DNA from: Macrostomum lignano
Lineage: Eukaryota
Direction: 5' to 3'
Assembly: GCA_002269645.1 (NCBI GenBank)
Contig: NIVC01000217.1
Location: 124,001 to 188,000 of the forward strand
DNA: 64,000 nt
The notes under the pieces are model-generated. The model was not told where the DNA came from. It did not search any database and was given only the letters and a program-made list of their open reading frames with translations. The stretch's first letter is position 1, and every line of letters starts with the position of its first letter. Shown in pieces: positions 2,790 through 60,540 of this stretch. A program made the position numbers and the translations under genes.

Positions 2790-3140
2790 GTTTGTGTTAT
2801 TTATTTTTTAATAGAGTCGGGGGTGCTTCGATCCGTGCGAAAGCCAACCCCCGAGGCACAGGAAGTGTACACGTCTGACGATTAGAAAGTCAGGACCTTA
2901 GAATTAGAAAGTTGGTTAGACCCTAACGTCTTGGCTAGGGCTGGGTGTGAACTACTTACTAACCCAAGCCTATGGACTAAGGCACCGCCAACCCAACAGT
3001 GGAATCAGGGACGGTGCTAGGACCGAGTCCACCCAGGCCACCACCCAGCAGACAAGTCCTTGGGAGTGCGCCCGAAAAATGGTTTAAAAAGCTTAAGTTT
3101 GCTACTTAAAGCGGTCCACTTAGAGTGCCAAGTTTAATTT
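2790..3140 (-). mobile_element. Dispersed retroposon-like fragment ('family B') carrying a conserved 85-nt core
   Basis: 2962-3046 matches 18886-18970 (6 substitutions, 1 gap); A-rich tail at the minus-strand 3' end; boundaries approximate. Confidence 0.55.
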
Positions 3141-3282
3141 TTAGTTTAGACGGCTCTTTCCGCTTATATTTTCTTGTCTAAAACTCCGCGTAATAATCCT
3201 ACTTCTGACATCTTCCGCCAATAAAGCTACTAACATTAGTGACAATGGCTTTATTGCATTCCTTCTGTCCTACGGATTCAGG

Positions 3283-3495
3283 GGCCCTAGCCCAGTGGTT
3301 CAACGAGGCGCTCTCACATTAATAGTTTGGGGCTGAATTGGAATCTCGGCTTGGCTCTGCTCGTGCAATTAACGCCTATGACGACCAACCCTTAAGGCAC
3401 AGTAAAGTGTACATGCCTAACGAAAAAGGAAGCTAGGTAGTCGGCGGAATGGGCAGTAGTGCCTCTCACCGGTTGTGTGAAAATGTCACTTAAAG
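3283..3495 (+). mobile_element. tRNA-headed SINE ('family A')
   Basis: A-box-like tagcccagtggt; central ggcttggctctgc...aaggcacagtaaagtgtac; tail gtcggcggaatgggcagta...ggttgtgtga; shared with 35225-35475 and 58290-58462. Confidence 0.75.
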
Positions 3496-3690
3496 TGCAC
3501 CAGGGTTAAAAAAAATCCTACGGATTTCCATATCTGTCATGTAAACTATAGGGGCAATCAAGTGTAGGCTGAGTTTTGATAAAAACATTTTTTCCTTCGT
3601 CCAGCTTACGAGATTATGCTGTAACTCAATGTGAAATAAAACGACCCATTTCAGGCCAGCCATCTCTCCCTCTGCTGCCAGCTCGCACAG

Positions 3691-4464
3691 ATGAATCGGC
3701 TGCATCGCCTTCTTCTACCGTCGCTGCTACAGCGGCATCACCGGAGAGCCTACGGCATCCTGGACACACCGGAGCAGAAGACCGTCTATCCCAGCTTCAA
3801 GCGTCTCCTTGATGCGGCCACTTCGGCGTCCCAGCAGTCCGACAAAGATCAACAGTCTACTGAAGACTCCGACAGCGCCGAACCGTCAGATCGACTATTA
3901 GACGCTGTTCAACGTTACGACAGCGAATTTCGTAAATCAGTTGAAGAAACTGCCGCTCTGGTTGCTACGGCAATGTCGCCAGATTCGGTAACTGCGGCTG
4001 TGTTGGAGTCGGCCAAGTCTGCCGGGCTGGTAACCGAGTCGAGAGCGGAACGATCCATCAGTTTGAGCTCGGATCCGTCTAAGAAGTTTCTGTTTTTGTC
4101 CGACTGTGTCCGGCGGTTGAATCGGCCAATTCCAAACTCGTTGCTGTCCGAGATCGCCACTGTAGGCGATGCAGTGGATTATTTCTTGCAACCGGCCGAG
4201 TTGCCTAAAGATCCGTTGAAACGGCTGGCCATGTCTGACGACCTGCCACCGAATGTTCACGTGCAGATTGATCCGCTGAGGTTTACAGATAATCCCGAGT
4301 TCTTTGATGGTGTCGACGCTTATCCAGGCAGGGACACTTTGGTTACGCAGCCCTGGGCCAGGGCCAAGTACCGCAGCAAGATTGCTCCGCCGCTGAGGTC
4401 GCCAAGGTGGACTGGGGTTGGCAGGAATCCCGGCAGTCTGTCCGATATGGTTAATAAGAGCTGA
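3691..4464 (+). CDS. MRPL50: Mitochondrial ribosomal protein L50, single exon
   Basis: 257-aa ORF; KFLFLSDC..IPNSLLSEI..LPPNVHVQ.DPLRF..GVDAYPG matches the Ribosomal_L50 pattern; basic transit-peptide-like N-terminus. Confidence 0.85.
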   Translation: MNRLHRLLLPSLLQRHHRRAYGILDTPEQKTVYPSFKRLLDAATSASQQSDKDQQSTEDSDSAEPSDRLLDAVQRYDSEFRKSVEETAALVATAMSPDSVTAAVLESAKSAGLVTESRAERSISLSSDPSKKFLFLSDCVRRLNRPIPNSLLSEIATVGDAVDYFLQPAELPKDPLKRLAMSDDLPPNVHVQIDPLRFTDNPEFFDGVDAYPGRDTLVTQPWARAKYRSKIAPPLRSPRWTGVGRNPGSLSDMVNKS

Positions 4465-4489
4465 TTGTCTTGATGAAGTCTGCTGTTCT

Positions 4490-4925
4490 CAACTCTGTAC
4501 TCACCTGTCTCTAGATTTGTCTGTTCTCACCTCACCTGTCTCTTGAACTGTCTGTTCTCACCTCACCTGTCTCTAGACCTGTCTGTTCTCACCTCACCTG
4601 TCTCTAGACTTGTCTGGTCTCACCTCGCCCTGTCTCTAGACTTGTCTGTTCTCATCTCACCTGTCTCTAGACTTGTCTGTTCTCATCTCACCTGTCTCTA
4701 GACCTGTCTGTTCTCACCTGTCTGTTCTCACCTGTCTCTAGACCTATCTGTTCTCACCTGTCTCTAGACCTATCTGTTCTCACCTGTCTCTAGACCTATC
4801 TGTTCTCACCTGTCTCTAGACCTGTCTGTTCTCACATGTCTGTTCTCTAGACCTGTCCGTTCTCACCTGCCTCTAGACCTGTCTGTTCTCACCCGTCTGT
4901 TCTCACACGTCTATTCTCACCTGTC
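4490..4925. repeat. 26-31 bp minisatellite
   Basis: ctcacctgtctctagacctgtctgtt units starting about 25 bp after the MRPL50 stop. Confidence 0.95.
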
Positions 4926-5897
4926 CGTCGGAATAAAAAGTTCCTAACCATCTTGCGGACTTATAGTAAATTTTAACGTATGTTTTTCAAGTGTCTGCAG
5001 CATATTTGCTTGTCATCTTGTTGAGTTTATTTTTGTTTCTTCGTTGCTATTGACGCAAGCTGAATGCACACATTATTGCTTGTGCGACTTTCTGCTTTTT
5101 GTATAATTCGAGTCATTTAAACAGTTTTCTAGTTGCAAAGTTGCTCCAAGAAAACCGTGTTAAACTGTTCTCTAAATATGTAATGGAAGTTTTCTGTAAT
5201 TGTTTTCTAATTGTTCATTTTTTACACTATATTAGAGGAAAAAGGTGTCGAATACCGTGACATGATGCCCCAAACGTGCACGATCTCGTGACAAGAATCG
5301 CTATAAAAACTCTCTAGTGGCTATAGGTTAAAAAGACTCTTGCGACTTTGTAACGACTCGAACGTGTTTATTGCAAGGCAGAGTCGTCCAATATTCATTG
5401 CGATGGCGCTTAACTTTTGGACACGCGTGGTACCTTGCTGGGGATTTACTAGTGGATTTACTGGTTTTAAATTTTGGTAGAATCGCTGCCACCAGGCTTC
5501 CTGCTTCCCTAATCCTATTAGTTTAGAGACAAAGGAAGAACTCAGGAAAACCAAATTATTTAACAAAAGTTTATATTTCAAAAAAATAGAATCCCGAATT
5601 CTAAGGAATCCCGAAAGCTAGCGATTTTCCCCCGCTCTAATTACTTTCCCAAACCTAAACTACTGACAGTAGGCAAAAAGCATATCTGCTTCGCTACTAA
5701 TTCCCCTTCCTAAAATACTACCCTACTAACACTTTCTACTAATTAAGTAGGCTAGTTAGCGGGAAATTGGAGATCAATAGGCCGCACTATTGCCAATGAT
5801 ACTCATTCTAGCGCAGATCAAGTCAACTGTTACAGCTCTGGATATTCTTTACTAACTTAATTCATCAATTTTTCAGCAGGTTTGTGTCAGTTAGGAC

Positions 5898-6314
5898 ATG
5901 GAAGATCTCGGAGGCCGGTGTCACAAGTGCGGCTTCCACGGTCACTACTCGTTCCAGTGCAGAAACATTGTGAATGGAGCTGAGATGGCTCTGGACGTGA
6001 GCAGCACGTCATCCGAGGATGAACCCGGCTCGTCCTTACAGAAACGCGACCGATCCAGGTCTCCTGTCCGGCCTAAAGAAGCGGCAGAGAAGCTGAAAAA
6101 GAAGCGAAAGGCAAAGAAAAAAGACGACATTAAAAAGAAGTTAAAAAAGAAGAAAGAGAAGAACAGGAAACGGTGGAGAAAGTCTTCAACCTCTTCGACG
6201 TCCTCGTCAAGTTCCAGTTCGTCTTCAGACTCGTCAAGCGATGCAAAAAAGAAAAAGAAGAACAAGAAGAAAGACAAAAAGAAGAACAAGAAGAAGGATA
6301 AGAAAAAGAAGTAG
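5898..6314 (+). CDS. SREK1IP1: SREK1-interacting protein 1 (zinc knuckle with Lys/Ser-rich tail)
   Basis: CHKCGFHGHYSFQCRN CCHC knuckle followed by LDVSSTSSED and a poly-K/S tail, as in SREK1IP1/p18SRP. Confidence 0.88.
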   Translation: MEDLGGRCHKCGFHGHYSFQCRNIVNGAEMALDVSSTSSEDEPGSSLQKRDRSRSPVRPKEAAEKLKKKRKAKKKDDIKKKLKKKKEKNRKRWRKSSTSSTSSSSSSSSSDSSSDAKKKKKNKKKDKKKNKKKDKKKK

Positions 6315-6924
6315 CTTAGCGATGTTACGACACATTTTAGGTCTTCTTAATCATATGGCTTAATATTTGACTCAAATTTGTAATTGTAAATTTTTTTGTC
6401 AACTTAAGTGCTTAACACTTTCAAATATTTCTACTGGTATTGCTTTTTTCATGCTAAGTTTGTAAACAGGCGTTCAAAGTTGAAAGTCTATAAAATAATA
6501 AAATAGATTCGGTCATAAAATTTCTGACTTAAGAAACTCCAATAAAACGCAAGCATTTAGCACAAGCACACAAGCATCCAATTGTTGAACGAACTGATTA
6601 ACATCAGTGCGCTCTACCAGTCTGACAAATAATAAAGCTCTAAACACCGAATTATACCAATATTGATGGGCGTTAGCTCGTTTCGGCCCCATGCAACCCT
6701 GTTTCACCACCCGCTGAGACTGTCTATGGTAAAATCCCATTTACTCCAATGCATTCAGTTGGTTTCACGGCCCGCTGAAAATGTCAATGGCAAAGTCAGA
6801 AGAAAGCGGCGTCAAGGGGGCGCTAAGCCCTCTTTCAAGGGTGTGGGACTCCCAGCACACCAGTACTCTAGAGAAAGAATGAAATCTAAGAAATTGTCTG
6901 CGAACTTATCAGTGGGCTTGTGTG

Positions 6925-6992
6925 CCTGCTCAGGGGAGTCGGCGGAATGGGCAGTAAATGTCTCTCGCTGGTTGTGTGAAATTTTTTTCGTA
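6925..6992 (+). mobile_element. Family A SINE 3' tail fragment
   Basis: cctgctcaggggagtcggcggaatgggcagtaaatgtctctcgctggttgtgtgaaa is nearly identical to the reverse complement of 35229-35290. Confidence 0.75.
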
Positions 6993-7589
6993 CGTAGTAG
7001 AAAAGTGAGTCTCGCGCAATTTTGTTTGAAACTGAATTCCAATGCTCTCAAATCTTCTTCCCGTCTGCGTAATTAATGCAAATTTACTTCAATCGTTCTA
7101 AAAACCTGAAATGCTCTCCGTAAAGGTGAAAACTTCGACACTGAAATATCTATGACGGGAATTGCCTAAAGACAAGACGTTTCTATTTCTTTACTTTTGG
7201 AGACTCTTTGGACTTTTGGAAAAAAATGGCAAAGAAAAAATATGAACCTTGCATGCTTTGTTGCTATTTTATAGGCCTTTTTAAGCTGTAAATATTATAT
7301 TATAAATATATAATGCGACGATAAGTATGGTATACATCATTTTATCGGTTTTTACAATTATATGAATGTTGGAAAATTCTCACAGGAATCTAATCAGAAA
7401 ACCGTTGGTTTGCGCCTTTAAAGTTATTTTTTAACTAGCTACCGTTGGTAAGTTCAGTTGACATCAAAGATCATACCAAATTCATAGTATATTATCATAT
7501 AATCTTAGGCAGGATTGGGAATGTGCAGTACACCAGTTATAGAAGCAAAACTATGAAAAAATTGGTTATATTTTAAGGAATTATTGTTC

Positions 7590-9330
7590 CTCCTTCCCTC
7601 ATGCTGTCTCTAGAATCTCCCTCATGCTGTCTCTAGAATCTCCCTCATGCTGTCTCTAGAAGCTCCCTCATGCTGTCTCTAGATCTCCCTCATGCTGTCT
7701 CTAGAATCTCCCTCATGCTGTCTCTAGAAGCTCCCTCATGCTGTCTCTAGATCTCCCTCATGCTGTCTCTAGAAGCTCCCTCATGCTGTCTCTAGAATCT
7801 CCCTCATGCTGTCTCTAGAAGCTCCCTCATGCTGTCTCTAGAATCTCCCTCATGCTGTCTCTAGAAGCTCCCTCGTGCTGTCTCTAGAAGCTCCCTCATG
7901 CTGTCTCTAGAAGCTCCCTCATGCTGTCTGTAGAACCAACCTCATGCTGTCTCTAAAATCTCCCTCATGGCTGTCTCTAGAATCTCCCTCATGCTGTCTC
8001 TAGAATCTCCCTCATGGCTGTCTCTAGAATCTCCCCTATGCTGTCTCTAGAATCTCCCACATGCTGTCTCTAGAATCTCCCCTATGCTGTCTCTAGAATC
8101 TCCCCTATGCTGTCTCTAGAATCTCCCCTATGCTGTCTCTAAAATCTCCTAAATGCTGTCTCTAGAATCTCCCTCATGCTGTCTCTAGAATCTCCCTCAT
8201 GCTGTCTCTAGAATCTCCCTCATGCTGTCTCTAGAATCTCCCTCATGCTGTCTCTAGAATCTCCCTCATGCTGTCTCTAGAATCTCCCTCATGCTGTCTG
8301 TAGAATCTCCCTCATGCTGTCTCTAGAATCTCCCCTATGCTGTCTCTAGAATCTCCCCCATGCTGTCTGTAGAATCTCACTCATGCTGTCTCAAGAATAT
8401 CCCTCATGCTGTCTCTAGAATCTCCCCCATGCTGTCTGTAGAATCTCCCTCATGCTGTCTCTAGAATCTCCCCTATGCTGTCTCTAGAATTTCCCCCATG
8501 CTGTCTGTAGAATCTCACTCATGCTGTCTCAAGAATATCCCTCATGCTGTCTCTAGAATCTCCCTCATGCTGTTTCTAGAATCTCCCCCATGCTGTCTGT
8601 AGAATCTCCCCCATGCTGTCTCAAGAATCTCCCTCATGCTGTCTCTAGAATCTCCCTCATGCTGTCTCTAGAATCTCCCCCATGCTGTCTCTAGAAGCTC
8701 CCTCATGCTGTCTGTAGAATCTCCCCTATGCTGTCTCTAGAATATCCCTCATGCTGTCTCTAGAATCTCCCCCATGCTGTCTGTAGAATCTCCCTCATGG
8801 CTGTCTCTAGAATCTCCCCTATGCTGTCTCTAGAATCTCCCTCATGCTGTCTCTAGAATCTCCCTCATGCTGTCTCTAGAATCTCCCCTATGCTGTCTCT
8901 AGAATCTCCCTCATGCTGTCTCTAGAATCTCCCCTATGCTGTCTCTAGAATCTCCCTCATGCTGTCTCTAGAATCTCCCTCATGCTGTCTCTAGAATCTC
9001 CCCCATGCTGTCTGTAGAATCTCACTCATGCTGTCTCAAGAATATCCCTCATGCTGTCTCTAGAATCTCCCCCATGCTGTCTGTAGAATATCCTTCATGC
9101 TGTCTCTAGAATCTCCCTCATGCTGTCTCTAGAATCTCCCTCATGCTGTCTCTAGAATCTCCCCCATGCTGTCTGTAGAATCTCACTCATGCTGTCTCAA
9201 GAATATCCCTCATGCTGTCTCTAGAATCTCCCTCATGCTGTTTCTAGAATCTCCCCCATGCTGTCTGTAGAATCTCCCCCATGCTGTCTCTAGAAGCTCC
9301 CTCATGCTGTCTGTAGAACCAACCTCATGC
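7590..9330. repeat. 23-bp minisatellite with variant units and higher-order blocks
   Basis: ctccctcatgctgtctctagaat repeated about 75 times; ends about 30 bp from the GT32 stop codon. Confidence 0.97.
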
Positions 9331-9358
9331 TATATACGCTGTACACTGCTCAGGAGCA

Positions 9359-9852
9359 TTAGAGCCGGTAAACTTCTACAGTTCTCCAGTAAACACCTGT
9401 CTTGCTGGCCTTCTCGTATCTCCGAACTGCTGGCCACACTGAAGTGACATTAAACAGCAGTTGATTTTTCCACCGGCCTTGTGCAGCAATCAGTCGCACG
9501 GAAGCAGATTGAATCAGGCCGTGATGTTGCAGTCCAACCGTGTACTCATTTGGTTGCAATCCGGCTCTGATTGCCGTAGCGTTGGGTTCGCCAGTTACAT
9601 TGGAGACTATACTTGAGCAGGCTTCGCTTCGAGTAGTGTAGACAGCTCTTAGTTCTGGCCATCGACGGAGTTGCTGGCAGAGGCCGAGCATTACGTCCGG
9701 GTTTCTCAGCGTAGATGAGAAATACTCCCACGGCAGCAGGTACACGCTTCGCTCCGGTTGGTACCTGTCTGCTCCTGGCTGCTTTCTCTGTTGTTGCTTT
9801 CTCTGCCACAGCAGGTGACATTCGGTTGGGAAGCTCCCGTCTAAGCTGAGAT
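9359..9852 (-). CDS. GT32-like glycosyltransferase, last exon
   Basis: Acceptor ttgcAG at 9854-9853, phase 1; encodes VYLLPWEYFS...YTVGLQHHG; stop at 9361-9359. Confidence 0.8.
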
Positions 9853-10481
9853 CTGCAATTGTTGGTAGAGCAGGCTTGGTAAACGCTAACAATAATATTG
9901 TACTCGTATTTCACAGTGTGTGAGTTGGTATCCTTCGCATCTCCATAAGTGCAGATAATAAAGTGGATGTCGGCTTCAGGGCCGAGAATGGAGACCGTAG
10001 TGAAGCTCCGGAACTTAACTTGATCATTCATTGTTGACACGAGATCCAATTTTAATTATCCCCGCAATTGAAGCAAGTATCTCACGCCTTAACAACGAAA
10101 CCATTTTGCTTATTCCGTCTCGATTTAAAATCTTGAAGACAGGGCGTGCTACGTCTCTGCCTGGTTTAAACACTGTGCCTTGCGAGAGAATTGATCTAGA
10201 TTAATGTTGCTTTAGCTACTGGGTCGGATGTTGCCATTTACTTCGTCAGGCTTTCAACTTACGAGGGTACTGGGACTAGATCTAGATAAATACATATGCG
10301 AGTTATTTTTAATATCACCTTAATTTAGACAACCCTTGACAATTTCGTGGCAGAAGCTCGAAATTAATTAATGCAACCGTGCACTAGAAATCGAACCACG
10401 AGGGCGACGGCGCTACAGTCAGGCTCGTTAAACGCTTTAATTGCTCTGCCAAGTCTCCTCTTCCTGTCTCTCTATTATTAC

Positions 10482-10703
10482 CTTGTCCAATGGACTCCCT
10501 TCTCTGCATAACGTCGATGGCGTGTCGGAACCAGGCACTTCCCGGCGCAGCTCCCATAGCCGCCGGGCTCAGTTTGAACTGAGCATTCTCAAGGATGCGA
10601 TGGTTCTCTGGTCGTTCCAACGCCAAGAAGGTGACGGAGTTTGCAGCTTCCAGTGCGATGTCGAGTGGCTTCAGGCACTCCACTGTAGTGTCCAAGAAGA
10701 CAC
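10482..10703 (-). CDS. GT32-like glycosyltransferase, exon 3 (DxD position)
   Basis: Acceptor cgcAG at 10705-10704, donor G|GTAATA at 10481; 222 bp, phase 1-1; GGVFLDTTVECLKPLD. Confidence 0.82.
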
Positions 10704-10839
10704 CTGCGAGGTGTGATGGGAAGAGGCTGATTTGGGGATTCTGCCATGGATGTACAGCCATGACTACTATCTGCAAATTTGTCTGCTATCTATCTGATAC
10801 AGCTAAATTATAGCACGCATCTATCTGCCCCAATCCAAC

Positions 10840-11175
10840 GCTAACTACTCCCACTCCAACCCCATCTAACTACCCCGCTCCAACCCCATCTAACTACCCC
10901 ACTCCAACCCCATCTAACTACCCCACTCCAACCCCATCTAACTACCCCACTCCAACCCCATCTAACTACCCCGCTCCAACCCTATCTAACTACCCCGCTC
11001 CAACCCCATCTAACTACCCCACTCCAACCCCATCTAACTACCCCACTCCAACCCCATCTAACTAACCCACTCCAACCCCATCTAACTACCCCACTCCAAC
11101 TCCATCTAACTACCCCGCTCCAACTCCATCTAACTACCCCACTCCAACCCCATCTAACTACCCCACTCCAACCCC
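10840..11175. repeat. 24-bp intronic minisatellite next to a splice donor
   Basis: taactaccccactccaaccccatc repeated about 14 times, starting about 15 bp into the intron after the donor at 11190. Confidence 0.95.
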
Positions 11176-11190
11176 ACCAGCCAGACTCAC

Positions 11191-11530
11191 CCCCGAACCG
11201 ATGCAGCACAGGATACTTGGCCATAGCCAGCCTCTCAGCCTGACTAACAGTGCCAGATGAGTAGAGTTTGAGCAGCTCCGGCCACTCTTTGAGCAGCAAC
11301 AGGCGAACATCGGCCTCAGTCCAGAGGTGCACAGTCCATCCGGGATTCAGTGCGATGCAGCTGTTCATCAGCGGCGCCAACGCGGCCGGCAGCAGCTCAG
11401 ACCTGCTGGCAAAGTGCAGCAATTTCGGGATAGTTGAGTCTGACTGGCCTAAGCCTGAGATGGCGAGGTAGAGCTGCTGTATGCCGCCGCTTTGCTCCAT
11501 CGCGATGAGCAGCGCTGCGATCACTAGCAC
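11191..11530 (-). CDS. GT32-like (Gly_transf_sug; SUR1/OCH1-type) glycosyltransferase, exon 2
   Basis: Acceptor ctcAG|GTG with upstream gctaac branch point, donor G|GTGAGT; IPKLLHF..NPGWTVHLWTE..WPELL..KYPVLHRFGG is the GT32 N-terminal signature. Confidence 0.85.
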
Positions 11531-11574
11531 CTGAGTGAGCGGTTTAGAGTTCGTTAGCTGGGGTTTGGATGGCC

Positions 11575-12710
11575 TGTGATCACAGGGGTGATTTCCTAGA
11601 ATAGATAGCTGTGATCTCAGAGTGATTTTCTAGAATAGATACCCTGTGATCTCAGGGGTGATTTCCTAGAATAGGGACCCTGTGATCTCAGGTGTGATTT
11701 CCTAGAATAGATACCCTGTGATCTCAGGGGTGATTTCCTAGAATAGATACCCTGCGATCTCCAGGTGATTTCCTAAAATAGATACCCTGTCCCTAGAATA
11801 GCTACCCTGTGATCTCAGGTGATTTCCTAGAATAGGGACCCTGTGATCTCAGGTGTGATTTCTTAGAATAGGGACCCTGTGATCTCAGGTGTGATTTCCT
11901 AGAATAGATACCCTGCGATCTCAGGGTGATTTCCTAGAATAGATACGCTGCGATCTCAGGGTGATTTCCTAGAATAGATACCCTGTGATCTCAGGGTGAT
12001 TTCCTAGAATAGATACCCTGTGATCTCAGAGTGATTTCCTAGAATAGATACCCTGCGATCTCAGGTGATTTCCTAGAATAGATACCCTGTGATCTCAGGT
12101 GATTTCCTAGAATAGAGACCCTGTGATCTCAGGGGTGAGTCAGGTGATTTCCTAGAATAAATACCCTGAGATCTTAGGGTGATTTCCTAGAATAGATACC
12201 ACGAAATCTCAGAGTGATTTCCTAGAGTAGATACCTGTGATCTCAGTGTGATTTCCTAGAGTAGATACCTGTGATCTCAGGTGATTTCTTAGAGTAGATA
12301 CCTGTGATCTCAGGTGATTTCTTAGAGTAGATACCTGTGATCTCAGGTGATTTCCTAGAGTAGATACCTGTGATCTCAGGTGATTTCCTAGAGTAGATAC
12401 CTGTTATCTCAGGTGATTTCCTAGAGTAGATACCTGTGATCTCAGGTGATTTCCTAGAGTAGGTACCTGTGATCTCAGGTGATTTCCTAGAGTAGGTACC
12501 TGTGATCTCAGGTGATTTCCTAGAGTAGGTACCTGTGATCTCAGGGTGATTTTCTAGAGTAGATACCTGTGATCTCAGGGTGATTTCCTAGAGTAGATAC
12601 CTGTGATCTCAGATGATTTCCTAAAATAAACACCCTGTGATCTCAGATGATTTCCTAAAATAAACACCCTGTGATCTCAGATGCTTTCCTAAAATAAACA
12701 CCCTGTGATC
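11575..12710. repeat. 33-35 bp minisatellite, array 1
   Basis: ctgtgatctcagg(g)tgatttcctagaatagatacc repeats; fills the intron between exon 1A and exon 2. Confidence 0.97.
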
Positions 12711-12754
12711 TCTGGTACTGAGCAAGCTCACACACGCATAAACACCTGTCTCAC

Positions 12755-12817
12755 CATCAATAGCAAAGATAGCAGAAGTCTTTGTCCAATCCGTGTTTTT
12801 GAAAGGCAAAATTTCAT
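12755..12817 (-). CDS. GT32-like gene, alternative first exon 1A (MKFCLSKTRIGQRLLLSLLLM)
   Basis: ATG at 12817, 63 bp, donor ATG|GTGAGA; joins exon 2 in phase 0 and completes a type II signal-anchor. Confidence 0.75.
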
Positions 12818-13194
12818 GCTGTATTGAATGACAAGAAAATGTTAGTCTTGCTTTAAAGGTCCAAATCGTAGCCATATAAAAGGGTCATCCATGTATGAAT
12901 AAAACCGTGTATAGGACTTTCCGTGCATAAGCACTGCAGCTTACGTTTTTACCATAGACAACTAAGGGATCTGCAGTAACCAATCGGTGCGAACGATGGC
13001 TTCGCGGGACAAAGTTGCATCCCCAAATTTAAGGCAGACGAGCAATCCATGGTTTTATTCATCCATGGGGTCATCCGAAAAGTTTCAGCAATCGGATGAT
13101 TTTGTGCCATAGACAACTCGTGTGATTAGGAGCAGTCGCAAACTTCTGTTCTCTAGAGAAAATTTTGTGAGATCACAGAGATAGCTCGTATATA

Positions 13195-13900
13195 CCCTGT
13201 GATCTCAGGTGATTTCCTAGAATAGATGCCTGTGATCTCAGGTGATTTCCTAGAATAAATACCCTGAGATCTCAGGTGATTTCCTAGAATAGATACCCTG
13301 TGATCTCAGTGTGATTTCCTAGAATAGATGCCTGTGATCTCAGGGTGATTTCCTAGAATAGATACCCTGTGATCTCAGTGTGATTTCCTAGAATAGATGC
13401 CTGTGATCTCAGGGTGATTTCCTAGAATAGATACCCTGTGATCTCAGTGTGATTTCCTAGAATAGATACCCTGTGATCTCAGTGTGATTTCCTAGAATAG
13501 ATGCCTGTGATCTCAGGGTGATTTCCTAGAATAGATACCCTGTGATCTCAGGTGATTTCCTAGAATAAATACCCTGAGATCTTTAGGGGGATTTCCTAGA
13601 ATAGATACCCTGAGATCTCAAGGTGATTTCCTAGAATAGATACCCTGAGATCTTTAGGGGGATTTCCTAGAATAGATACCCTGAGATCTCAAGGTGATTT
13701 CCTAGAATAGATACCCTGAGATCTCAGGGTGATTTCCTAGAATAGATACCTGTTATCTCAAGGTGATTTCCTAGAATAGATGCCCTGAGATCTCAGGTGA
13801 TTTCCTAGATTAGATACCATGTGATCTCAGGGGTGATTTCCTAGAATAGATACCTGTTATCTCAGGTGATTTCCTAGATTAGATACCTGTTATCTCAGCT
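13195..13900. repeat. 33-35 bp minisatellite, array 2 (same family as 11575-12710)
   Basis: Same unit as array 1; lies directly after exon 1B in transcript orientation. Confidence 0.97.
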
Positions 13901-13953
13901 ATGACAAGTAAACATGCTTACACGCACACGCACAATAACCGAGCCTTTCTCAC

Positions 13954-14037
13954 CGTCAAAAACAAAGACAACAGACGTCTTTGTCCAATCCTTGTTTTTG
14001 TAAGGCAAAAATTGCAAAACTTAAAAAAGTTTTTCAT
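13954..14037 (-). CDS. GT32-like gene, alternative first exon 1B (MKNFFKFCNFCLTKTRIGQRRLLSLFLT)
   Basis: ATG at 14037, 84 bp, donor ACG|GTGAGA, phase 0; clear paralogue of exon 1A (FCL-KTRIGQR-LLSL). Confidence 0.7.
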
Positions 14038-14419
14038 GCTTTTGTGGATGGCAACAAAACTGTGTTAAAGTCTTGCATTGGGCTTGGCTCTGTAGCCATA
14101 TATTGCAATATATATCATATTGCTAAGCGACAGAGAATTTCTACCCAGGTTATAACCGGTGCAGGTGAGGTTCATTATGTACTGTACAGGCTCTGGAATT
14201 GCGCAGTTCGGCGCACTGACGAATGAAATATCTGGGGTGGCTGGTAGCTATAAATATTTAGTTGCCAATCATTCTCTTCTTATACTGGTAACTTGGCAAC
14301 TTGGCTCAAGCATTATTTTCAATTCTAATTAGTGCCGGGCTTCACCTGCTGTTTCAAGTCACTAGCGTATGCTAAAACCGAGTTTGCATATTTGTGGTAT
14401 TAAAGCACATGAGTCTGAA

Positions 14420-16215
14420 ATCCCGATTTGAGTCTGAATCTCAAATCCCAATTTGAGTCTGAATCACAATTTGAGTCTAAATCCCTATTTGTAGGGCCTC
14501 AAATCCTAATTTGAGTCTGAATCCCAATTTGTAGGGCCTCAAATCCCAATTTGAGTATCAAATCCCAATTTGAGTATCAAATCCCAATTTGAGTTTGAAT
14601 CCCTATTTGGGTGGAGAATCCCAATTTGAGTATCAAATCCCAATTTGAGTATCAAATCCCAATTTGAGTATCAAATCCCAATTTGAGTATCAAATCCCAA
14701 TTTGAGTATCAAATCCCAATTTGAGTTTGAATCCCTATTTGGGTGGAGAATCCCAATTTGAGTATCAAATCCCAATTTGAGTATCAAATCCCAATTTGAG
14801 TATCAAATCCCAATTTGGGTATCAAATCCCAATTTGAGCACCTATCAAATCCCAATTTGAGTATCAAATCCCCATTTGAGTATCAAATCCCAATTTTAGT
14901 ATCAAATCCCAATTTGGGTATCAAATCCCAATTTGAGCACCTATCAAATCCCAATTTGAGTATCAAATCCCAATTTGAGTATCAAATCCCAATTTGAGTA
15001 TCAAATCCCAATTTGAGTTTGAATCCCTATTTGGGTGGAGAATCCCAATTTGAGTATCAAATCCCAATTTGGGTATCAAATCCCAATTTGAGCACCTATC
15101 AAATCCCAATTTGAGTATCGAATCCCAATTTGAGTATCAAATCCCAATCTGAGTATCAAATCCCAATTTGAGTATCAAATCTCAATTTGAGTTTGAATCC
15201 CTATTTGAGTATCAAATCCCAATTTGAGTATCAAATCCCAATTTGAGTATCAAATCCCAATTTGAGTATCAAATCCCAATTTGAGTTTGAATCCCTATTT
15301 GGGTGGAGAATCCCAATTTGAGTATCAAATCCCAATTTGAGTATCAAATCCCAATTTGAGTATCAAATCCCAATTTGAGTATCAAATCCCAATTTGAGTA
15401 TCAAATCCCAATTTGAGTATCAAATCCCAATTTGAGTATCAAATCCCAATTTGAGTATCAAATCCCAATTTGAGTATCAAATCCCAATTTGAGTATCAAA
15501 TCCCAATTTGAGTATCAAATCCCAATTTGAGCACCTATCAAATCCCAATTTGAGTATCGAATCCCAATTTGAGTATCAAATCCCAATCTGAGTATCAAAT
15601 CCCTATTTGAGTATCAAATCCCAATTTGAGTATCAAATCCCAATTTGTAGGGCCTCAAATCCCAATTTGAGTATCAAATCCCAATTTGAGCACCTATCAA
15701 ATCCCAATTTGAGTATCGAATCCCAATTTGAGTATCAAATCCCAATTTGTAGGGCCTCAAATCCCAATTTGAGTATCGAATCCCAATTTGAGTATCAAAT
15801 CCCAATTTGTAGGGCCTCAAATCCCAATTTGAGTATCAAATCCCAATTTGAGTATCAAATCCCAATTTGAGTATCAAATCCCAATTTGAGTCTGAATCCC
15901 AATTTGAGTATCGAATCCCAATTTGAGTATCGAATCCCAATTTGAGTATCAAATCCCAATTTGAGTTTGAATCCCTATTTGGGTGGAGAATCCCAATTTG
16001 AGTATCAAATCCCAATTTGAGTTTGAATGCCTATTTGGGTGGAGAATCCCAATTTGAGTATCGAATCCCAATTCGAGTATCAAATCCCAATTTGAGTATC
16101 AAATCCCAATTTGAGTATCAAAACCCAATTTGAGTATCAAATCCCAATTTGAGTCTGAATCACAATTTGAGTCTGAATCCCAATTTGAGTCTGAATCCCA
16201 ATTTGGGTGAAAAAT
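14420..16215. repeat. 19-bp minisatellite with interspersed variant units
   Basis: tatcaaatcccaatttgag repeats with recurring variants (gggtggag, gcacctatc, gtagggcctc). Confidence 0.97.
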
Positions 16216-16934
16216 CTCAATTTAAGTATCGAATCCTTAAGACCAAACCCAAGCTTCTGAACTCTATAGCCTTTCTCAACCTTCTCTTCCTTCGCCTGAC
16301 TCATCCAACTCTGTGAATGTTCAACATCAATCCTGCTGGATAAACGCGCAGAAACCTCCTCACCAACGAGCCGGTCGCAATGAAGGCAGTCAGCTGCCGC
16401 CGTCTCCAGCTGCCCCGAGGAACAACGAATTTGGCGCTCATATTGATAAAATTTTTTTGCACAGCATGTAGTCTGAGTCTCTGCTCTACCCATAGTTGGT
16501 TTTGAGCTCCCGCGGAGCGGATTAAAAAGAATCAGGGTCCTCCTGGTGTTGCCTGCCTGGGGTTGTTGCAAATTCTTCAAGTGGGAAGCATTAACTATAA
16601 TCCTTTCCTGTCTTACCTCTCCTTGGGGGGTAGGGGGGGGGGTTGCATTTTATTACTTCCTCTCTGTTGAAAATAACAATGTTCAGATTTTTGCTGAGCT
16701 GTTCTGCGGCACGGCAGGGCAGCATCTGCTCCCTATAGGTACCTCAGCTACAGTCACGCATGCAGACTGCAAATTCTCCTTTTCTACTGTTGAGACAGAA
16801 AAAACGATTTTTGCAAGTATTTTAACGTAAATTTTACATGAAATATTACTTTTTGCTATTCAAAAGGATCGCCAATAAAAAGTTCTTGGCCTGTCACGTG
16901 GCAAAATGTATTATCGATTAACATTCTAAATCGG

Positions 16935-17500
16935 AAATCACGTGACCAAGTAAATAAACAGAGAAAAGCTCCAAAGTTTAAAAATCACGGGACCAAGTAA
17001 ATGAACGGATAAGAGTTCCAAAGTTTTAAGATCACGTGACCAAGTAAATAAACAGAGAAGAGTTCCAAAGTTTTAAGATCACGTGACCCAGTAAATAAAC
17101 AGAGAAGAGTTCCAAAGTTTTAAGATCACGTGACCAAGTAAATAAACAGAGAAGAGTTCCAAAGTTTTAAGATCACGTGACCAAGTAAATAAACAGAGAA
17201 GAGTTCCAAAGTTTTAAGATCACGTGACCCAGTAAATAAACAGAGAAGAGTTCCAAAGTTTTAAGATCACGTGACCAAGTAAATAAACAGAGAAAAGCTC
17301 CAAAGTTTAAAAATCACGGGACCAAGTAAATGAACGGATAAAAGTTCCAAAGTTTTAAGATCACGTGACCGAGTAAATAGACGGAGAAAAGCTCCAAAAT
17401 TTTAAAATCACGTGACCAAGTAAATAAACAGAGAAGAGTTCCAAAAGTGTAAGATCACGTGACCCAGTAAATGAACAGAGAAGAGTTCCAAAAGTTTTCA
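16935..17500. repeat. 47-bp minisatellite
   Basis: tcacgtgaccaagtaaataaacagagaagagttccaaagttttaaga repeated about 11 times (period measured 17032 to 17079). Confidence 0.95.
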
Positions 17501-18018
17501 ATCATGTGACAAGACTGACGGCCTGATGGCTTGTGGATTAACTGTTGGATTAACAATCCGCGTAAAAATGTTGTGTTTTTGTCTAAGCCATTCTACACTT
17601 ACCCTTGTATATGTATTGAGCCTCCACATGGTAGCACTTTTGGGACTTCGCCAGACAATTTCTCTTATTAATAATAGGTCTAGTAGGTAATACTGTGTTT
17701 TCCAGTCTTTTTTATGCGAAGGCAAGACAAAACAGCTGTTTAAAGGAAAAGCAGAATGCATTTAATTGCTGAGTTGGGCTAGCAAACAGCATGCAGGCAT
17801 GCGTCCGCACAGGGCCATTATTGCCAAAATAAACCAGCTCTCCAGGTTCGAGATGATATGCATCTTCAAGGAAACTGATTTGCTGCTCTTCTCGGATCAG
17901 CAGGGAATTACTGTGGACTTTATCCGCTTCTTGAGAGCAGAAGCTGCTTTTAACCCCTCACTTTGCCCCCTTGCCATAACATGCACTCTGAATTCCTTAT
18001 ATGGAAAAGCTGCACTTT

Positions 18019-18063
18019 TATCTATCTATCTATCTATCTATTTATCTATCTATCTATTTATCC

Positions 18064-18102
<39 letters not shown>
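18019..18102. repeat. (TCTA)n microsatellite at the 5' flank of the Penelope-like element
   Basis: Direct reading. Confidence 0.97.
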
Positions 18103-18713
18103 GTGTTGATTTTGTTTACAACGACACGCGCTATCTTCAAGTCAAAGCACAAGCATGGGAAAGGCCTTTGCGCCATCCTACGCCAACATATTTATGTCTG
18201 CCTGGGAATCCAAAGCTTTAGAAGCTGCTCCGTTTACCCCTCGTTTCTTCAAGCGCTACATTAACGACATTTTTATGGTTTTCGTCGGCACTGACGACGA
18301 ACTAAAGGAGATGCACAGGCATCTGAATGAATTCGATAGCGACATCAGACTCACGATGCAATACAGCAGAGAGAAGATTCACTGAATTCCAGGACTGCTG
18401 TGTCAGTCTGACTGACGCAGGCAACAACAAGAAGAGACTTTTGTGCTCAATCTACTTCAAATCCATCGATTCACGCCAGCTCTTACATCCGGGATCTTTT
18501 CACCCTGAAAAGCACACTTTCAAAGGTATACTGAAATCTCAGTTCCTCCGTTACGCTCACCGTTGCTAATTTAAAGAAGACTTCGATGAGGCCAGCAGCA
18601 GCTTAACAAGCATCCTGAAGAAACAAGGATACTCTGTCTGCTTAATCAGGGATGCTAAGAAATCTGCTCTCATCCAGGTAGGCCTCTACATAGAGCACGG
18701 GAACTTTGGCCCA
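18103..18713 (+). mobile_element. Penelope-like element, 5'-truncated and decayed reverse transcriptase/thumb
   Basis: FVYNDTRYLQVK/SMGKAFAPSYANIFM, RYINDIF (YxDD mutated), KSIDSRQLLHPGSFHP..FKGILKSQFLRY, ILKKQGY; frameshifts and stops. Confidence 0.88.
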
Positions 18714-20080
18714 GTTTGTTTGATGTTGAACGAGGGTGGGAACCAGTGCTACCCGCGGATCAGCCCAGGGAAGGGCTCTGCCGCTAGAGTTAAGGGGCTA
18801 ATCTACCAGGGGCATATAAGCCCGAGTAGCCCAGATTTGGACCAGGACTCAAGGCCTGGTGAGAGAGCCTTATTGAGCGCTACTCACCCAAGCCTATGAA
18901 CTAAGACACCGCCAACCCAACTGTGGAATCAGGGGACGGTGCAAGGACCGAATCCACCCAAGCCACCACCAACGACAAAACCCGAGTGTGCGCGAAAAGT
19001 TTTGGAAGTTTTTCGAAAAGCGATCCGAGAGTGGGAAAACCCAAAGTCTGCGGAAAGAATGCTTTAGATTGGAGCGAGACTGGGCAGCTTATTGCGATGG
19101 GCGAGTCTCCTGTCAGGTAGGCCACGACCCAAATAACCACCTATAGGGCTGCCAGCCACAAGGCTTTTTCACCATCCAGCTCTAAGAGATTTTGGAATTA
19201 CTTAGTAGCAGTCCGAGAGCGGAAAGACTCGAGTCTACGGGAAAAGGCTAATTTATTGGAGCGAGACTGGGAAGCTTATTGCGATGGGAGAGTCTCCTGT
19301 CAGGTAGGCCACGACCCAAATAACCACCTATAGGGCTGCCAGCCACAAGGCTTTTTCACCATCCAGCTCTAAGAGATTTTGGAATTACTTAGTAGCAGTC
19401 CGAGAGCGGAAAGACTCGAGTCTACGGGAAAAGGCTAATTTATTGGAGCGAGACTGGGCAGCTTATTGCGATGGGAGAGTCTCCTATCAGGTAGGCAACC
19501 GCATAATCCTCCTATAGGGCTGCGAGCTTCAAGGCTTTTTCGCTATCCAGCTATCTGGGGAAAGCCGGTTTTCCCCGAGTCGGGACGAACTCATTCCCCA
19601 GGACTCCAATTCACTGTCAGAGATGAGAGCCGAGACACAAAAGCAGGGAGACAACCAGAGGAGCCAGCAGATGGACCGAGGGAGCAGGTGGAAACACTGA
19701 GGCGAGACTTTCACTCCCAATGATTGGGTGGCTCAAGTGCCAAGATAAAACCAAGGGCTAAAACATGGGGACTAAAACTGAAGGAGGATCACACAACCTC
19801 AGGGGCTCAGCCTCAGGGCTGGCATCAACTGGGCTCTACCGTAAACTTTTGTGAATGGTCGTCTTTCCTGCAGGGCGGGTGCGACCGAGGGGCTGAAGTC
19901 CCGATCTAGCCACACTGCAGTCAAGATCTCCAACTCACTCCAGGTACACCTCCCCCCCCCCTAAACCAAGGCAGGGCCGAAAAATTAGAAAAGAATTCAG
20001 GGTCTATTTTTAGATGTGTACATCGCCTCCGGTGAGGGCACATTTATGATTGGGCTACCCGATAGATAGGCCAATTAGAT
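18714..20080 (-). mobile_element. ~1.37 kb family B insert splitting the Penelope RT from its endonuclease
   Basis: Non-coding, contains the core shared with 2962-3046, has a caaacaaac-type tail at the minus-strand 3' end and an internal 187-bp duplication; exact ends uncertain. Confidence 0.55.
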
Positions 20081-20129
20081 TGCGGCACAACCCGAGAAAT
20101 GCCGCCAGAAGGCAGCCAGGATAAAAACA

Positions 20130-20625
20130 GTCAGATACCGTCTTTACGGTCTACCGGCCAAGTTTTTTTAGGGTCGTCCAGTGCAACAAAAATGATTTAC
20201 AAAATTTGTCAAAAAGTTCGCTGTAACTCCAGGAATGTGGTGTATGCCATTCTGTGCAAGACTTGCAATGACCGCTGTATCTACGTAGGTGAGACTGGAG
20301 GCGCTCTCAAAGTCAGACTTCAGGCTCACTTGAGCGACATCAGACTGGCTAAGGACACCCCAATCTCCAGGCACTTTCGGTCACCAAACCACAGTATTCA
20401 GGACCTCCGCTTTATGGGTCTGTGGTGCCTCAGTACTGAGTGCCTGGCCACTAAAGAGGGCGCTCAACGCAGGCGGAGGAATATGGAGCAGAAGCTCATC
20501 GCTTTACTACAGACCCAGACTCCGGCAGGCTTAAACACCGTCATCACTGAAAAAGACGCCTGCATCCCAATAGTGAATTTAATTAAAGAAATTGTAATTG
20601 TACTGTGTCTGGTTTCTTTTCGCCT
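20130..20625 (+). mobile_element. Penelope-like element GIY-YIG endonuclease and short 3' end
   Basis: CNSRNVVYAILCKTC..IYVGETG..LKVRLQAH..ISRHF..EQKLIALLQT..GLN is the typical PLE GIY-YIG pattern. Confidence 0.9.
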
Positions 20626-20676
20626 TATCTATCTATCTATCTATCTGTCTATCTATCTATCTATTTATCTATCTAG

Positions 20677-22560: not shown

Positions 22561-22869
22561 CCCTCTCCTTGTCTTGAAGTGAATATCTAGAAAACAAAGC
22601 ATCTAAAAACAAATATTTTCCCTCTAAGTATTATAGGAGCGTAGAAGTATCTTAAACATATCTTTTAATTCTCCCCTTGTACTTCTCACAGACAGGTAAG
22701 CTCTGTCGGCAGCCACAACTATGGCCAGAATTTTATATCAATAAGTTTTGTATTTTTTCGCGTCATAAATATTAATTTCCTATTGAAATTTCAGGTTTTA
22801 CAGACAAGCAACGACAAAAAAGCTGAATTTCAGCATCGAGATATTTTTACACAAAAGCTGAAGATATCT

Positions 22870-29700: not shown

Positions 29701-29921
29701 TCCGGAGGCTCCTCGTCCTCGTCAGTCTCCGGAGCGTAGCTTCGCTGCCCGCTGCCGATCCCAGAGCGGTGGCGCTGAATTAGGCGGCCGATGAACCGGC
29801 TCAGGAGGACAGTCAGAATGCCGCCTACCAGGGCGATCGCGCTGGACGCCAGAAAGATGTGCCACTTCCGGTGCTCAACGCAAGCAAGTTCCGGTGATGA
29901 AGAGGCATTGCTGCTAGACAT
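26745..29921 (-). CDS. KCNMA1: Large-conductance Ca2+-activated K+ channel alpha subunit (BK/Slo1), intronless, 1058 aa
   Basis: S0-S6 segments, filter TVGYGDV, S4 RSTRALR, RCK1 [10 protein letters not shown], heme motif CSRCH, Ca bowl [13 protein letters not shown], all in one continuous ORF. Confidence 0.97.
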
Positions 29922-35147: not shown

Positions 35148-35224
35148 TGAGTAAGTGTGTGAAGTGCCATAACAGCCGTTTTTGCAAACTAATTACAACA
35201 GTGTATGAGCACCCTGACGAACTT

Positions 35225-59129: not shown

Positions 59130-60540
<1,411 letters not shown>

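What the first reader, a model, noticed from the sequence alone, without database searches (positions are those of the whole stretch)
2962..18970. Conserved ~85-nt structured-RNA core shared by dispersed non-coding retroposons
Seen: 2962-3046 and 18886-18970 differ by only 6 substitutions and 1 gap, while their flanks are largely dissimilar. On the minus strand the core folds into nested stems GCCU/AGGC, UGGACU/AGUCCA and GCACCGUC/GGCGGUGC, with an internal loop CGGUCC(U/U)(A/U)GC. Four of the six substitutions turn G-C pairs into G-U pairs on that strand (they would be A-C mismatches on the plus strand); the other two lie in loops. A more distant version (ggtggtgggcagtcggtcccagca...ataggctgg, with a C(UUCG)G tetraloop) sits at 52321-52390 inside a TSD-flanked, (TTAG)n-tailed insert. 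A 17-nt echo occurs at 30591. In all three main copies a simple-repeat or A-rich tail lies 3' of the motif in the same orientation. Inference: a family of non-autonomous retroposons held together by a functional RNA structure, either an RT-recognition element or an unclassified self-cleaving ribozyme. It does not fit hammerhead, HDV or twister consensus. Caveat: C-to-T changes are also the commonest mutation type.
Basis: partly seen in the sequence, partly recalled or inferred. Interest (0 to 1): 0.72.

Follow-up and report, generated by a model that had tools for sequence, protein, structure and literature searches.

The report
Conserved hairpin in flatworm retroposon copies
The two similar stretches are decayed copies of one short non-coding jumping element of the flatworm Macrostomum; its middle part is well preserved and can fold into a hairpin, but nothing shows it is a ribozyme, so this is ordinary repeat biology.

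Summary
The core pair is real: 2962-3046 and 18886-18970 differ by 6 substitutions and 1 gap, and similarity runs over 2957-3078 / 18881-18998. The window is Macrostomum (lignano or very close).

A third copy lies in M. lignano contig NIVC01001406.1. It is a 447-nt element with perfect 14-nt target-site duplications and a short (AAC)n-like tail. This fixes the sense strand as the window's minus strand and shows a non-autonomous retroposon family.

- Copy B is colinear with that element over about 300 nt. It is part of a 1,434-nt TSD-flanked insertion that splits a Penelope-like element.
- Copy A is only a 170-nt fragment, and its "A-rich tail" is not its own.
- The "distant version" at 52321 and the 17-nt echo are not supported.
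- Rfam gives nothing on either strand, ribozymes included.
- The hairpin is predicted in all three copies but is no more stable than shuffles. There is no compensatory covariation.
- All 8 single transitions in the main stems keep G·U pairing on the sense strand (p about 0.004-0.03), which is suggestive only.
- Segment phylogenies disagree (p=0.013), so mosaicism or local gene conversion partly explains the 92% A-B identity.

Verdict: a probably undescribed but ordinary retroposon family. A functional RNA domain is possible but unproven, and a ribozyme is unlikely.

The parts
2913..3082 (-). Copy A: a 170-nt fragment of the retroposon family, equivalent to positions 158-329 of the full L001 element. 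It comprises the linker, the hairpin core (2962-3046) and about 45 nt 3' of it.
   Evidence: blastn of the L001 element against the window: 3082-2913, 76% over 177 nt, E=2e-29. Covariance-model hit at 2952-3052(-), 113 bits.
18722..19019 (-). Copy B: the 3' two-thirds of the element, equivalent to L001 positions 142-433. It comprises the linker, the hairpin core (18886-18970), the 3' region, and the terminal sequence CCCTCGTTCAACATC abutting the TSD.
   Evidence: blastn: 19019-18720, 70% over 316 nt, E=3e-34. Covariance-model hit at 18876-18976(-), 96 bits. Tail and TSD read.
19018..19552 (+). The family's 5' module (L001 positions 4-139), inverted relative to copy B's core and repeated about 2.6-3 times as a 187-nt tandem.
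   Evidence: TRF reports period 187, 2.6 copies, 94%. blastn of the L001 element matches 19018-19157, 19207-19344 and 19394-19527 on the + strand.
19553..20155 (.). The remainder of the same TSD-bounded insertion. It has no homolog in the 109 kb examined and its origin is unknown.
   Evidence: blastn finds a self-hit only. It lies inside the TSD pair.
18708..18721 (.). Left target-site duplication (GGCCCAGTTTGTTT) of the 1,434-nt insertion carrying copy B.
   Evidence: Pattern positions. The PLE protein alignment overlaps itself at residues 310-313 across the insertion.
20156..20169 (.). Right target-site duplication (GGCCAAGTTTTTTT), matching the left one at 12 of 14 positions.
18103..20625 (+). 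Host of copy B: a 5'-truncated Penelope-like element. RT fragments lie at 18103-18721 and the GIY-YIG part at 20156-20563. It sits between (TATC)n arrays at 18019-18102 and 20626-20670. It is not itself part of the core family.
   Evidence: ORFs and frame translations. Homologs carry RVT_1 plus GIY-YIG Pfam domains. tblastn with P0121. TRF.
2816..2897 (+). Fragment of a different, tRNA-like-head SINE family (S-type), abutting copy A in the opposite orientation. It explains why A's 3' flank differs from B's.
   Evidence: Shares the B-box-like and CCAACCCC.AAGGCACAG.AAGTGTACA domain with the S copies at 3279-3515, 35211-35432, 58215-58370 and 41382-41535.

Best explanation
The two similar stretches are diverged copies of one modular, non-coding, non-autonomous retroposon family of Macrostomum lignano or a very close relative.

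**Shown**
- A complete member is 447 nt long. It has a roughly 135-nt 5' module, a 45-nt linker, a 78-nt G/U-rich hairpin, a roughly 150-nt 3' region and a short (AAC)n-like end.
- It is flanked by 14-nt target-site duplications, so it moves through an RNA copy that is reverse-transcribed at a staggered nick by an enzyme supplied in trans.
- The element has no tRNA, 5S or 7SL head.
- Copy A is a 170-nt fragment. Copy B is the 3' two-thirds, joined head-to-head to tandem copies of the 5' module inside a single TSD-bounded insertion in a Penelope-like element.
- The 'core' is simply the element's slowest-evolving, almost indel-free middle segment.

**Inferred**
- The segment is kept because the sense-strand RNA of the source (master) copies needs this hairpin and its invariant loops in cis. 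Possible roles are RNA stability, RNP assembly, or recognition by the partner's protein. This would resemble the conserved central domains of SINE superfamilies.
- The unusually high A-B identity (92%) is partly due to mosaicism or local gene conversion rather than constraint alone.
- It is not a self-cleaving ribozyme.
For: **Organism**
- The BK-channel ORF is 95% identical to M. lignano A0A1I8JSB2.
- Repeats are shared with M. lignano contigs.

**Retroposon nature**
- The L001 element spans 18734-19180, between perfect 14-nt repeats TAACTATAGGTGTT at 18720-33 and 19181-94. Zero of 100 shuffles give two such matches.
- The insertion carrying copy B has a 12/14 TSD and interrupts a contiguous PLE protein alignment.

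**Family homology**
- B-L001: 316 nt at 70%. A-L001: 177 nt at 76%. A-B: 123 nt at 84%.
- There are three covariance-model hits of 93-113 bits in 109 kb and nothing else.

**Conservation profile**
- Hairpin identity is 92, 86 and 81% for the three pairs, with 1-2 gap columns.
- Identity is 62-77% with many gaps in the next 50 nt, and 43-64% further 3'.
- Loops are nearly invariant: 2 variable unpaired columns.

**Structure**
- The same nested hairpin is predicted in all three copies, with 92.6% of cells paired against 29-49% when partners are slid.
- At copy A's Watson-Crick pairs in the main stems, 8 of 8 single transitions in B and L001 give G·U on the sense strand and none gives A·C. This gives p=0.004 under symmetry and 0.009-0.03 after allowing for the observed C/T excess.

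**No small-RNA head**
- ARAGORN finds none, and Rfam at E<=10 finds none.

**Precedent**
- Conserved SINE central domains include a V-domain hairpin with an internal loop, and SINE-like elements exist without a small-RNA head (PMC4758252, PMC4824008, PMC5786205).
Against: - Only three copies could be gathered.
- There is no compensatory double change in the main stems, and the covariation term is -0.32 kcal/mol.
- Five pairs are broken by transversions, mostly in L001.
- Fold energies are ordinary: z = -1.4 and +1.07 for the hairpin, and +1.31 for the whole L001 element, where the hairpin is not in the MFE structure.
- C/T differences exceed A/G differences on the sense strand outside the hairpin too, so G·U-type changes are partly a mutational signature.
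- For A versus L001 the linker (88%) is as conserved as the hairpin (86%).
- The partner reverse transcriptase is unidentified.
- Membership in Repbase, Dfam or SINEBase families could not be checked.
Confidence: 0.6

Rival explanations
1. There is no functional structure. The high A-B identity comes from mosaic evolution: either ectopic gene conversion between two same-orientation copies 15.9 kb apart, or template switching between subfamilies. The G·U pattern is a strand-biased C-to-T mutational signature in a G/U-rich sequence that folds by chance.
For: - Segment incongruence. In the linker A groups with L001 (8 sites against 1). In the hairpin A groups with B (10 against 5). Fisher p=0.013.
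- A and B lie in the same orientation 15.9 kb apart.
- The A-B similarity tract is only about 122 nt with sharp edges.
- There is a C/T excess over A/G in the flanks.
- Fold z-scores are not significant.
- No compensatory changes are seen.
Against: - The hairpin is also the least gapped segment, and among the best conserved, against the unlinked L001 copy.
- 8 of 8 transitions are sense-compatible, which remains p of about 0.01-0.03 after allowing for the C/T bias.
- The loops are nearly invariant.
Confidence: 0.3
2. The core is a new self-cleaving ribozyme carried by retroposons, comparable to the hammerheads in schistosome Sm-alpha elements, PLE pLTRs and retrozymes.
For: - The elements are flatworm retroposons.
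- One copy lies in a complex tandem/inverted insertion next to a 187-nt tandem.
- The loops are conserved.
Against: - There is no hit to any Rfam ribozyme model on either strand at E<=10 in the three loci, and none at gathering score in the window.
- The fold is a simple bulged hairpin without a multi-helix junction or pseudoknot.
- The hairpin sits mid-element, not at a processing boundary.
- No CUGANGA...GAAA core was seen by eye.
Confidence: 0.03
3. The core is the stringent-type 3' stem-loop through which a partner LINE's reverse transcriptase recognises its template.
For: - It is a hairpin on the sense strand.
- Family members end in a short repeat-like tail rather than poly(A).
- Such stem-loops with G·U and compensatory changes are known (PMC4824008).
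Against: - The hairpin ends about 150 nt upstream of the 3' end in both L001 and B. Recognition stem-loops normally sit directly before the tail.
- No LINE carrying it was found in 109 kb.
- The only RT-bearing element in view, a PLE, has an unrelated 3' end.
Confidence: 0.07

Closest known systems
Conserved central domains of SINE superfamilies (CORE, V, Deu, Nin-DC, Ceph, Meta), especially the Vhc hairpin subdomain of V-SINEs (PMC4758252, PMC4824008, PMC5786205)
   Same: It is a short central segment that is better conserved than the rest of a non-autonomous retroposon. It is predicted to form a hairpin with an internal loop, its function is unknown, and the elements are modular with exchangeable parts.
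   Different: It has been seen in one species only. There is no tRNA, 5S or 7SL head. It has not been shown to be shared by families with truly different heads and tails. Sequence similarity to any named domain could not be tested because no Repbase or SINEBase was available.
LP-SINEs and bipartite non-autonomous LINEs: short retroposons without a small-RNA head (PMC4758252, PMC5786205)
   Same: The elements are TSD-flanked, a few hundred nt long and non-coding. They have a short repeat-like 3' end, and the head is not derived from a small RNA.
   Different: The 5' module has not been traced to any LINE 5' UTR, and no partner has been identified.
Non-autonomous Penelope-like derivatives, animal retrozymes and schistosome Sm-alpha elements (PMC8557442; bioRxiv 10.64898/2026.07.22.740005; Sm-alpha cited from own knowledge)
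   Same: It occurs in a flatworm genome that carries PLEs. Copy B lies in a single insertion with an inverted 5'-truncated part plus head-to-tail repeats, which is the architecture described for PLE-type insertions.
   Different: There is no hammerhead motif. The 3' end is unlike that of the one PLE seen. The L001 copy is a plain, simple insertion.

Membership tests
Non-autonomous retroposon (SINE in the broad sense) | Target-site duplications flanking the copy | tested here: met
   L001 has a perfect 14-nt repeat at 18720-33 and 19181-94. The insertion carrying copy B has 12/14 matching repeats at 18708-21 and 20156-69, backed by the PLE protein overlap. None was found for fragment A.
Non-autonomous retroposon (SINE in the broad sense) | Dispersed multiple copies with no coding capacity | tested here: met
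   Three copies were found in 109 kb. All frames across the core are broken by stops or are shorter than 80 aa. phmmer of the longest core-spanning peptide gave 0 hits among 1.84 billion representatives.
Canonical SINE (pol III) | 5' head derived from tRNA, 5S, 7SL or another small RNA, with A/B boxes | tested here: not met
   ARAGORN found 0 tRNAs. Rfam at E<=10 found nothing on the 5' module in the window or in L001.
Canonical SINE or LINE-dependent element | 3' end shared with an autonomous partner | not testable with these tools
   No LINE was found in the 109 kb. The PLE's 3' end is unrelated. A genome-wide search was not possible.
SINE superfamily central domain (CORE, V, Deu, Nin, Ceph, Meta) | Sequence similarity to a named domain consensus | not testable with these tools
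   No repeat library was available. The papers hold no sequences or supplements as text, and k-mer text searches found only primers.
SINE superfamily central domain | The same domain shared by families with different heads or tails, and across species | tested here: inconclusive
   B and L001 are colinear. A differs because it is a fragment next to another SINE. No copy was found in metagenome, viral or prokaryote collections. Other flatworm genomes were not searchable.
Self-cleaving ribozymes (hammerhead, HDV-like, twister, twister-sister, pistol, hatchet, hairpin) | Match to the family covariance model | tested here: not met
   Rfam gave 0 hits at gathering score. The E<=10 scans of the three loci gave no ribozyme hit on the core.
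Self-cleaving ribozymes | Site-specific self-cleavage | not testable with these tools
   This needs in vitro transcription or RNA-end mapping.
Stringent-type LINE 3' recognition stem-loop | Stem-loop immediately upstream of the 3' tail repeats | tested here: not met
   The hairpin ends about 150 nt before the 3' end in L001 and in B.
PLE-mobilised non-autonomous element or retrozyme | Hammerhead motif, and/or 3' similarity to a PLE | tested here: not met
   No hammerhead was found. There is no similarity to the PLE 3' end at 20564-20625.
PLE-mobilised non-autonomous element or retrozyme | Complex tandem/inverted insertion architecture | tested here: inconclusive
   The feature is present in the insertion carrying B but absent from the simple L001 copy.

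The most novel reading that the evidence does not exclude
The hairpin with its invariant loops is a so-far undescribed cis-acting structured-RNA module, selected in the master copies of a flatworm retroposon family. That family is perhaps mobilised by Penelope-like elements. The module would be needed for template recognition or RNP assembly, or less likely would be catalytic.
Probability: 0.12. Interest if true: 0.55.

Novelty: new member of a known kind. Interest (0 to 1): 0.22.

Why it matters
If the hairpin is truly selected, it would be a small central domain of a non-autonomous retroposon in Macrostomum lignano, an animal that can be genetically transformed. The function of such domains has been an open question for SINE superfamilies (PMC4824008), and this could give a handle on it. 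As the evidence stands, the finding mainly adds a probably unannotated repeat family. It also gives a worked example of a nested, complex insertion inside a Penelope-like element, which is useful for repeat annotation of this very repeat-rich genome.

Tried and rejected
- **7SL, 5S, tRNA or snRNA origin of the core or the 5' module.** An apparent resemblance to the 7SL Alu domain was a lead only. Rfam at E<=10 found nothing and ARAGORN found nothing.
- **Hammerhead in the 187-nt tandem.** By eye there is a GAAA plus short stem but no CUGANGA, and there is no Rfam hit.
- **The 52321 site as a family member.** Rejected by blastn, the shuffle test and the covariance model.
- **My first idea that copy A is + oriented.** It was based on the S-type SINE domain at 2843-2880. 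It is resolved as two abutting fragments in opposite orientation.
- **More copies from public data.**
  - Two metagenome pattern scans gave 0 hits and 1 chance hit inside a bacterial membrane-protein gene.
  - One viral scan and one prokaryote scan gave 0 hits each.
  - phmmer with a core-spanning peptide gave 0 hits.
- **More Macrostomum DNA.**
  - Exact-protein look-ups of three window ORFs and of P0001 found nothing.
  - The PLE protein search returned only short non-Macrostomum contigs.
  - The GPCR search returned nothing.
  - Only two M. lignano loci (44 kb) could be fetched.
- **Known SINE-domain sequences from the literature.** None are held as text.
- **TSD for copy A.** None was found.


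Full report
**What is there**

Positions 2962-3046 and 18886-18970 differ by six substitutions and one single-base gap. blastn extends the match to 2957-3078 / 18881-18998, which is 84% over 123 nt with E=2e-28. Beyond that the two loci do not align.

The 17-nt echo at 30591 has E=2.9 and is chance. The "more distant version" at 52321-52390 fails three tests:
- blastn does not find it.
- Its best local alignment to copy A, essentially GGGTGGTGG...GTCGGTCC.AGCA, is reached by 30 of 500 dinucleotide shuffles.
- A covariance model of the core does not list it at E<=10, even with all filters off.

That site does lie in a genuine retroposon. It spans 51774-52627, has a (TTAG)4 tail and a 16-nt TSD. 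It belongs to a different family.

**Organism and extra material**

The window is eukaryotic and very rich in minisatellites. An intronless 1058-aa BK-channel ORF at 26745-29921(-) is 95% identical to Macrostomum lignano A0A1I8JSB2. I fetched two M. lignano loci around paralogous genes, L001 and L002, 44 kb in total.

L001 holds a third copy of the core. Read in full, it is a 447-nt element at L001 18734-19180. It is flanked by a perfect 14-nt direct repeat, TAACTATAGGTGTT, at 18720-33 and 19181-94, and it ends ...CCACCCCCGTTTAACAACAACAA. This shows the family moves by retroposition.

**Anatomy of the window copies**

Using the L001 element as a ruler, copy B (19019-18722, minus strand) is colinear with L001 positions 142-433 at 70% identity. 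That stretch covers the linker, the hairpin and the 3' region, and it ends in CCCTCGTTCAACATC.

Copy B lies inside a 5'-truncated Penelope-like element (PLE):
- The RT fragments and the GIY-YIG ORF are seen, and homologs carry RVT_1 plus GIY-YIG domains.
- The PLE sits between (TATC)n arrays, which fits the microsatellite insertion bias reported for PLEs (PMC8557442).
- tblastn with a related PLE protein covers residues 88-313 at 18090-18719 and residues 310-448 at 20156-20575.
- So a 1,434-nt insertion (18722-20155) splits the PLE. It has a 12/14 TSD: GGCCCAGTTTGTTT at 18708-21 and GGCCAAGTTTTTTT at 20156-69.

That single insertion contains three parts:
- copy B;
- immediately at 19018, the family's 5' module (L001 positions 4-139), inverted and repeated about three times as a 187-nt tandem;
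- about 600 nt with no homolog in the 109 kb examined.

An inverted 5'-truncated copy next to head-to-tail repeats is the architecture described for PLE-type insertions (PMC8557442). Twin priming by a LINE enzyme could also produce it. I cannot decide between the two.

Copy A is only a fragment (2913-3082, L001 positions 158-329, 76% identity). It abuts a 5'-truncated piece of a different, tRNA-like-head SINE family (2816-2897) that lies on the opposite strand.

**Is the core special?**

In a three-way alignment the segments compare as follows.

| Segment | A-B | A-L001 | B-L001 | Gaps |
|---|---|---|---|---|
| 78-nt hairpin | 92% | 86% | 81% | 1-2 gap columns |
| 45-nt linker | 65% | 88% | 72% | 8-11 gap columns |
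| Next 50 nt | 62% | 62% | 77% | many gaps |
| Further 3' | 43% | 57% | 64% | many gaps |

The middle of the element is therefore the best kept and least gapped part. However, the segments tell different histories. In the linker A groups with L001 (8 informative sites against 1). In the hairpin A groups with B (10 against 5). Fisher p=0.013. A and B lie 15.9 kb apart in the same orientation. Mosaicism or local gene conversion therefore accounts for part of the striking A-B identity.

**Structure**

RNAfold predicts the same nested hairpin in A and B on the sense strand, and RNAalifold predicts it for all three copies. In the consensus structure 92.6% of cells are paired, against 29-49% when partners are slid.

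Several results count against a selected structure:
- The fold is not unusually stable. z is -1.4 for A and +1.07 for B, and the antisense strand of A folds about as well.
- In the full L001 element the hairpin is not in the MFE structure, and z is +1.31.
- In B's 304-nt part the inner stem persists, with z = -2.8.
- There is no compensatory double change in the main stems, and the covariation term is -0.32 kcal/mol.
- Five pairs are broken by transversions.

One result counts for it. I took the structure from copy A alone. In the main stems, all 8 single transitions in B or L001 at A's Watson-Crick pairs give G·U on the sense strand, and none gives A·C. Only two unpaired columns vary. Under a strand-symmetric null this is p=0.004.

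- 8:0 and 4:0 in pairwise flank alignments;
- 20:7, 15:8 and 22:10 in the noisier three-way alignment.

Allowing a per-site C/T excess of 1.7- to 5-fold, the probability of 8 out of 8 becomes 0.009-0.03. With three sequences this is suggestive and no more.

**What it is not**

- Rfam gives no hit at gathering score in the whole window.
- Rfam also gives nothing on the core, the 5' module or the 187-nt tandem on either strand at E<=10 in any of the three loci. So it is not a hammerhead, HDV-like, twister, pistol or hatchet ribozyme, nor a tRNA, 5S, 7SL or snRNA derivative.
- ARAGORN finds no tRNA.
- The hairpin is about 150 nt from the 3' end, unlike the terminal recognition stem-loops of stringent LINE/SINE pairs (PMC4824008).
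- It is non-coding. All frames across it are broken or short, and a 55-aa conceptual peptide found nothing among 1.84 billion protein representatives.

**Comparison with what is known**

The picture matches the well-known class of modular non-autonomous retroposons with a conserved central domain of unknown function. Examples are CORE, V, Deu, Nin and Meta.
- The V-domain contains a conserved hairpin with an internal loop (PMC4758252, PMC4824008).
- Lacking a small-RNA head, the family resembles LP-SINEs or bipartite non-autonomous LINEs (PMC4758252, PMC5786205).
- A PLE-dependent element is also possible (PMC8557442; bioRxiv 10.64898/2026.07.22.740005).
- I found no description of SINE-like families of M. 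lignano in the searchable literature.
- I could not screen Repbase, Dfam or SINEBase, so "undescribed" is provisional.

**Verdict**

The retroposon reading and the strand assignment are right. The third copy at 52321, the echo, the tail of copy A, and the ribozyme and RT-recognition suggestions are not supported. A selected sense-strand hairpin is possible, at roughly even odds against mosaicism plus mutation bias. Proof needs a genome-wide copy set. Interest is low to moderate, and the finding is a new member of a known kind.

Noticed in passing
window 18103-20625 (+), with (TATC)n at 18019-18102 and 20626-20670: A 5'-truncated Penelope-like element (RT fragments plus an intact-looking GIY-YIG domain) is inserted in a (TATC)n microsatellite. 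It is split by the 1,434-nt nested insertion.
   Followed up: yes
window 3279-3515 (+); also 35211-35432 (-), 58215-58370 (-), 6899-6981 (+), 41382-41535 (-), 2816-2897 (+); L001 3145-3198; L002 13920-14033: A second SINE family with a tRNA-like head. The copy at 3279-3515 has a poly(A) tail and an 11-nt TSD, TCCTACGGATT. The copies share the domain CCAACCCC.AAGGCACAG.AAGTGTACA, which may belong to a known SINE superfamily. ARAGORN does not call the head as a tRNA.
   Followed up: partly
window 51511-52806: An 854-nt retroposon (51774-52627, (TTAG)4 tail, 16-nt TSD) is nested in a TIR element. The terminal arms of that element are tandem 15-mers (GTCAAAAGGGCGACA), 92% complementary.
   Followed up: partly
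window 19018-19552: A 187-nt tandem (2.6 copies, 94%) made of the retroposon family's 5' module, inverted relative to the adjacent core copy. It has a retrozyme-like layout, but no hammerhead was found.
   Followed up: partly
core family copies A, B and L001, sense strand: C/T differences outnumber A/G differences on the sense strand both inside and outside the hairpin (for example 8:0 and 4:0 in the B-L001 flanks). This points to a strand-asymmetric mutation process, perhaps acting at the RNA stage.
   Followed up: partly
window 53963-54118; L001 580-743: A foldback repeat with 63-nt arms (86% complementary, 30-nt spacer) is also present in an M. lignano contig. It may be a MITE-like element.
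   Followed up: no
window 26745-29921 (-) and 38566-39843 (+): There are long intronless ORFs: a 1058-aa BK (Slo) channel and a 425-aa GPCR-like protein. The GPCR-like ORF returned no homolog at all in the word-indexed search.
   Followed up: no
window, many sites (e.g. 7595-9331, 11573-13898, 14441-16236, 21368-24444, 56740-57721, 59134-60525, 61941-63990): Minisatellite arrays with periods of 14-47 nt, and tetranucleotide arrays, are exceptionally dense. They cover a large share of the window.
   Followed up: no
protein P0122: A protein deposited as coming from a 'Kangiellaceae bacterium' MAG is a Penelope-like RT/GIY-YIG protein, 52% identical to the window's PLE. It is probably animal DNA binned into a bacterial MAG.
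   Followed up: no
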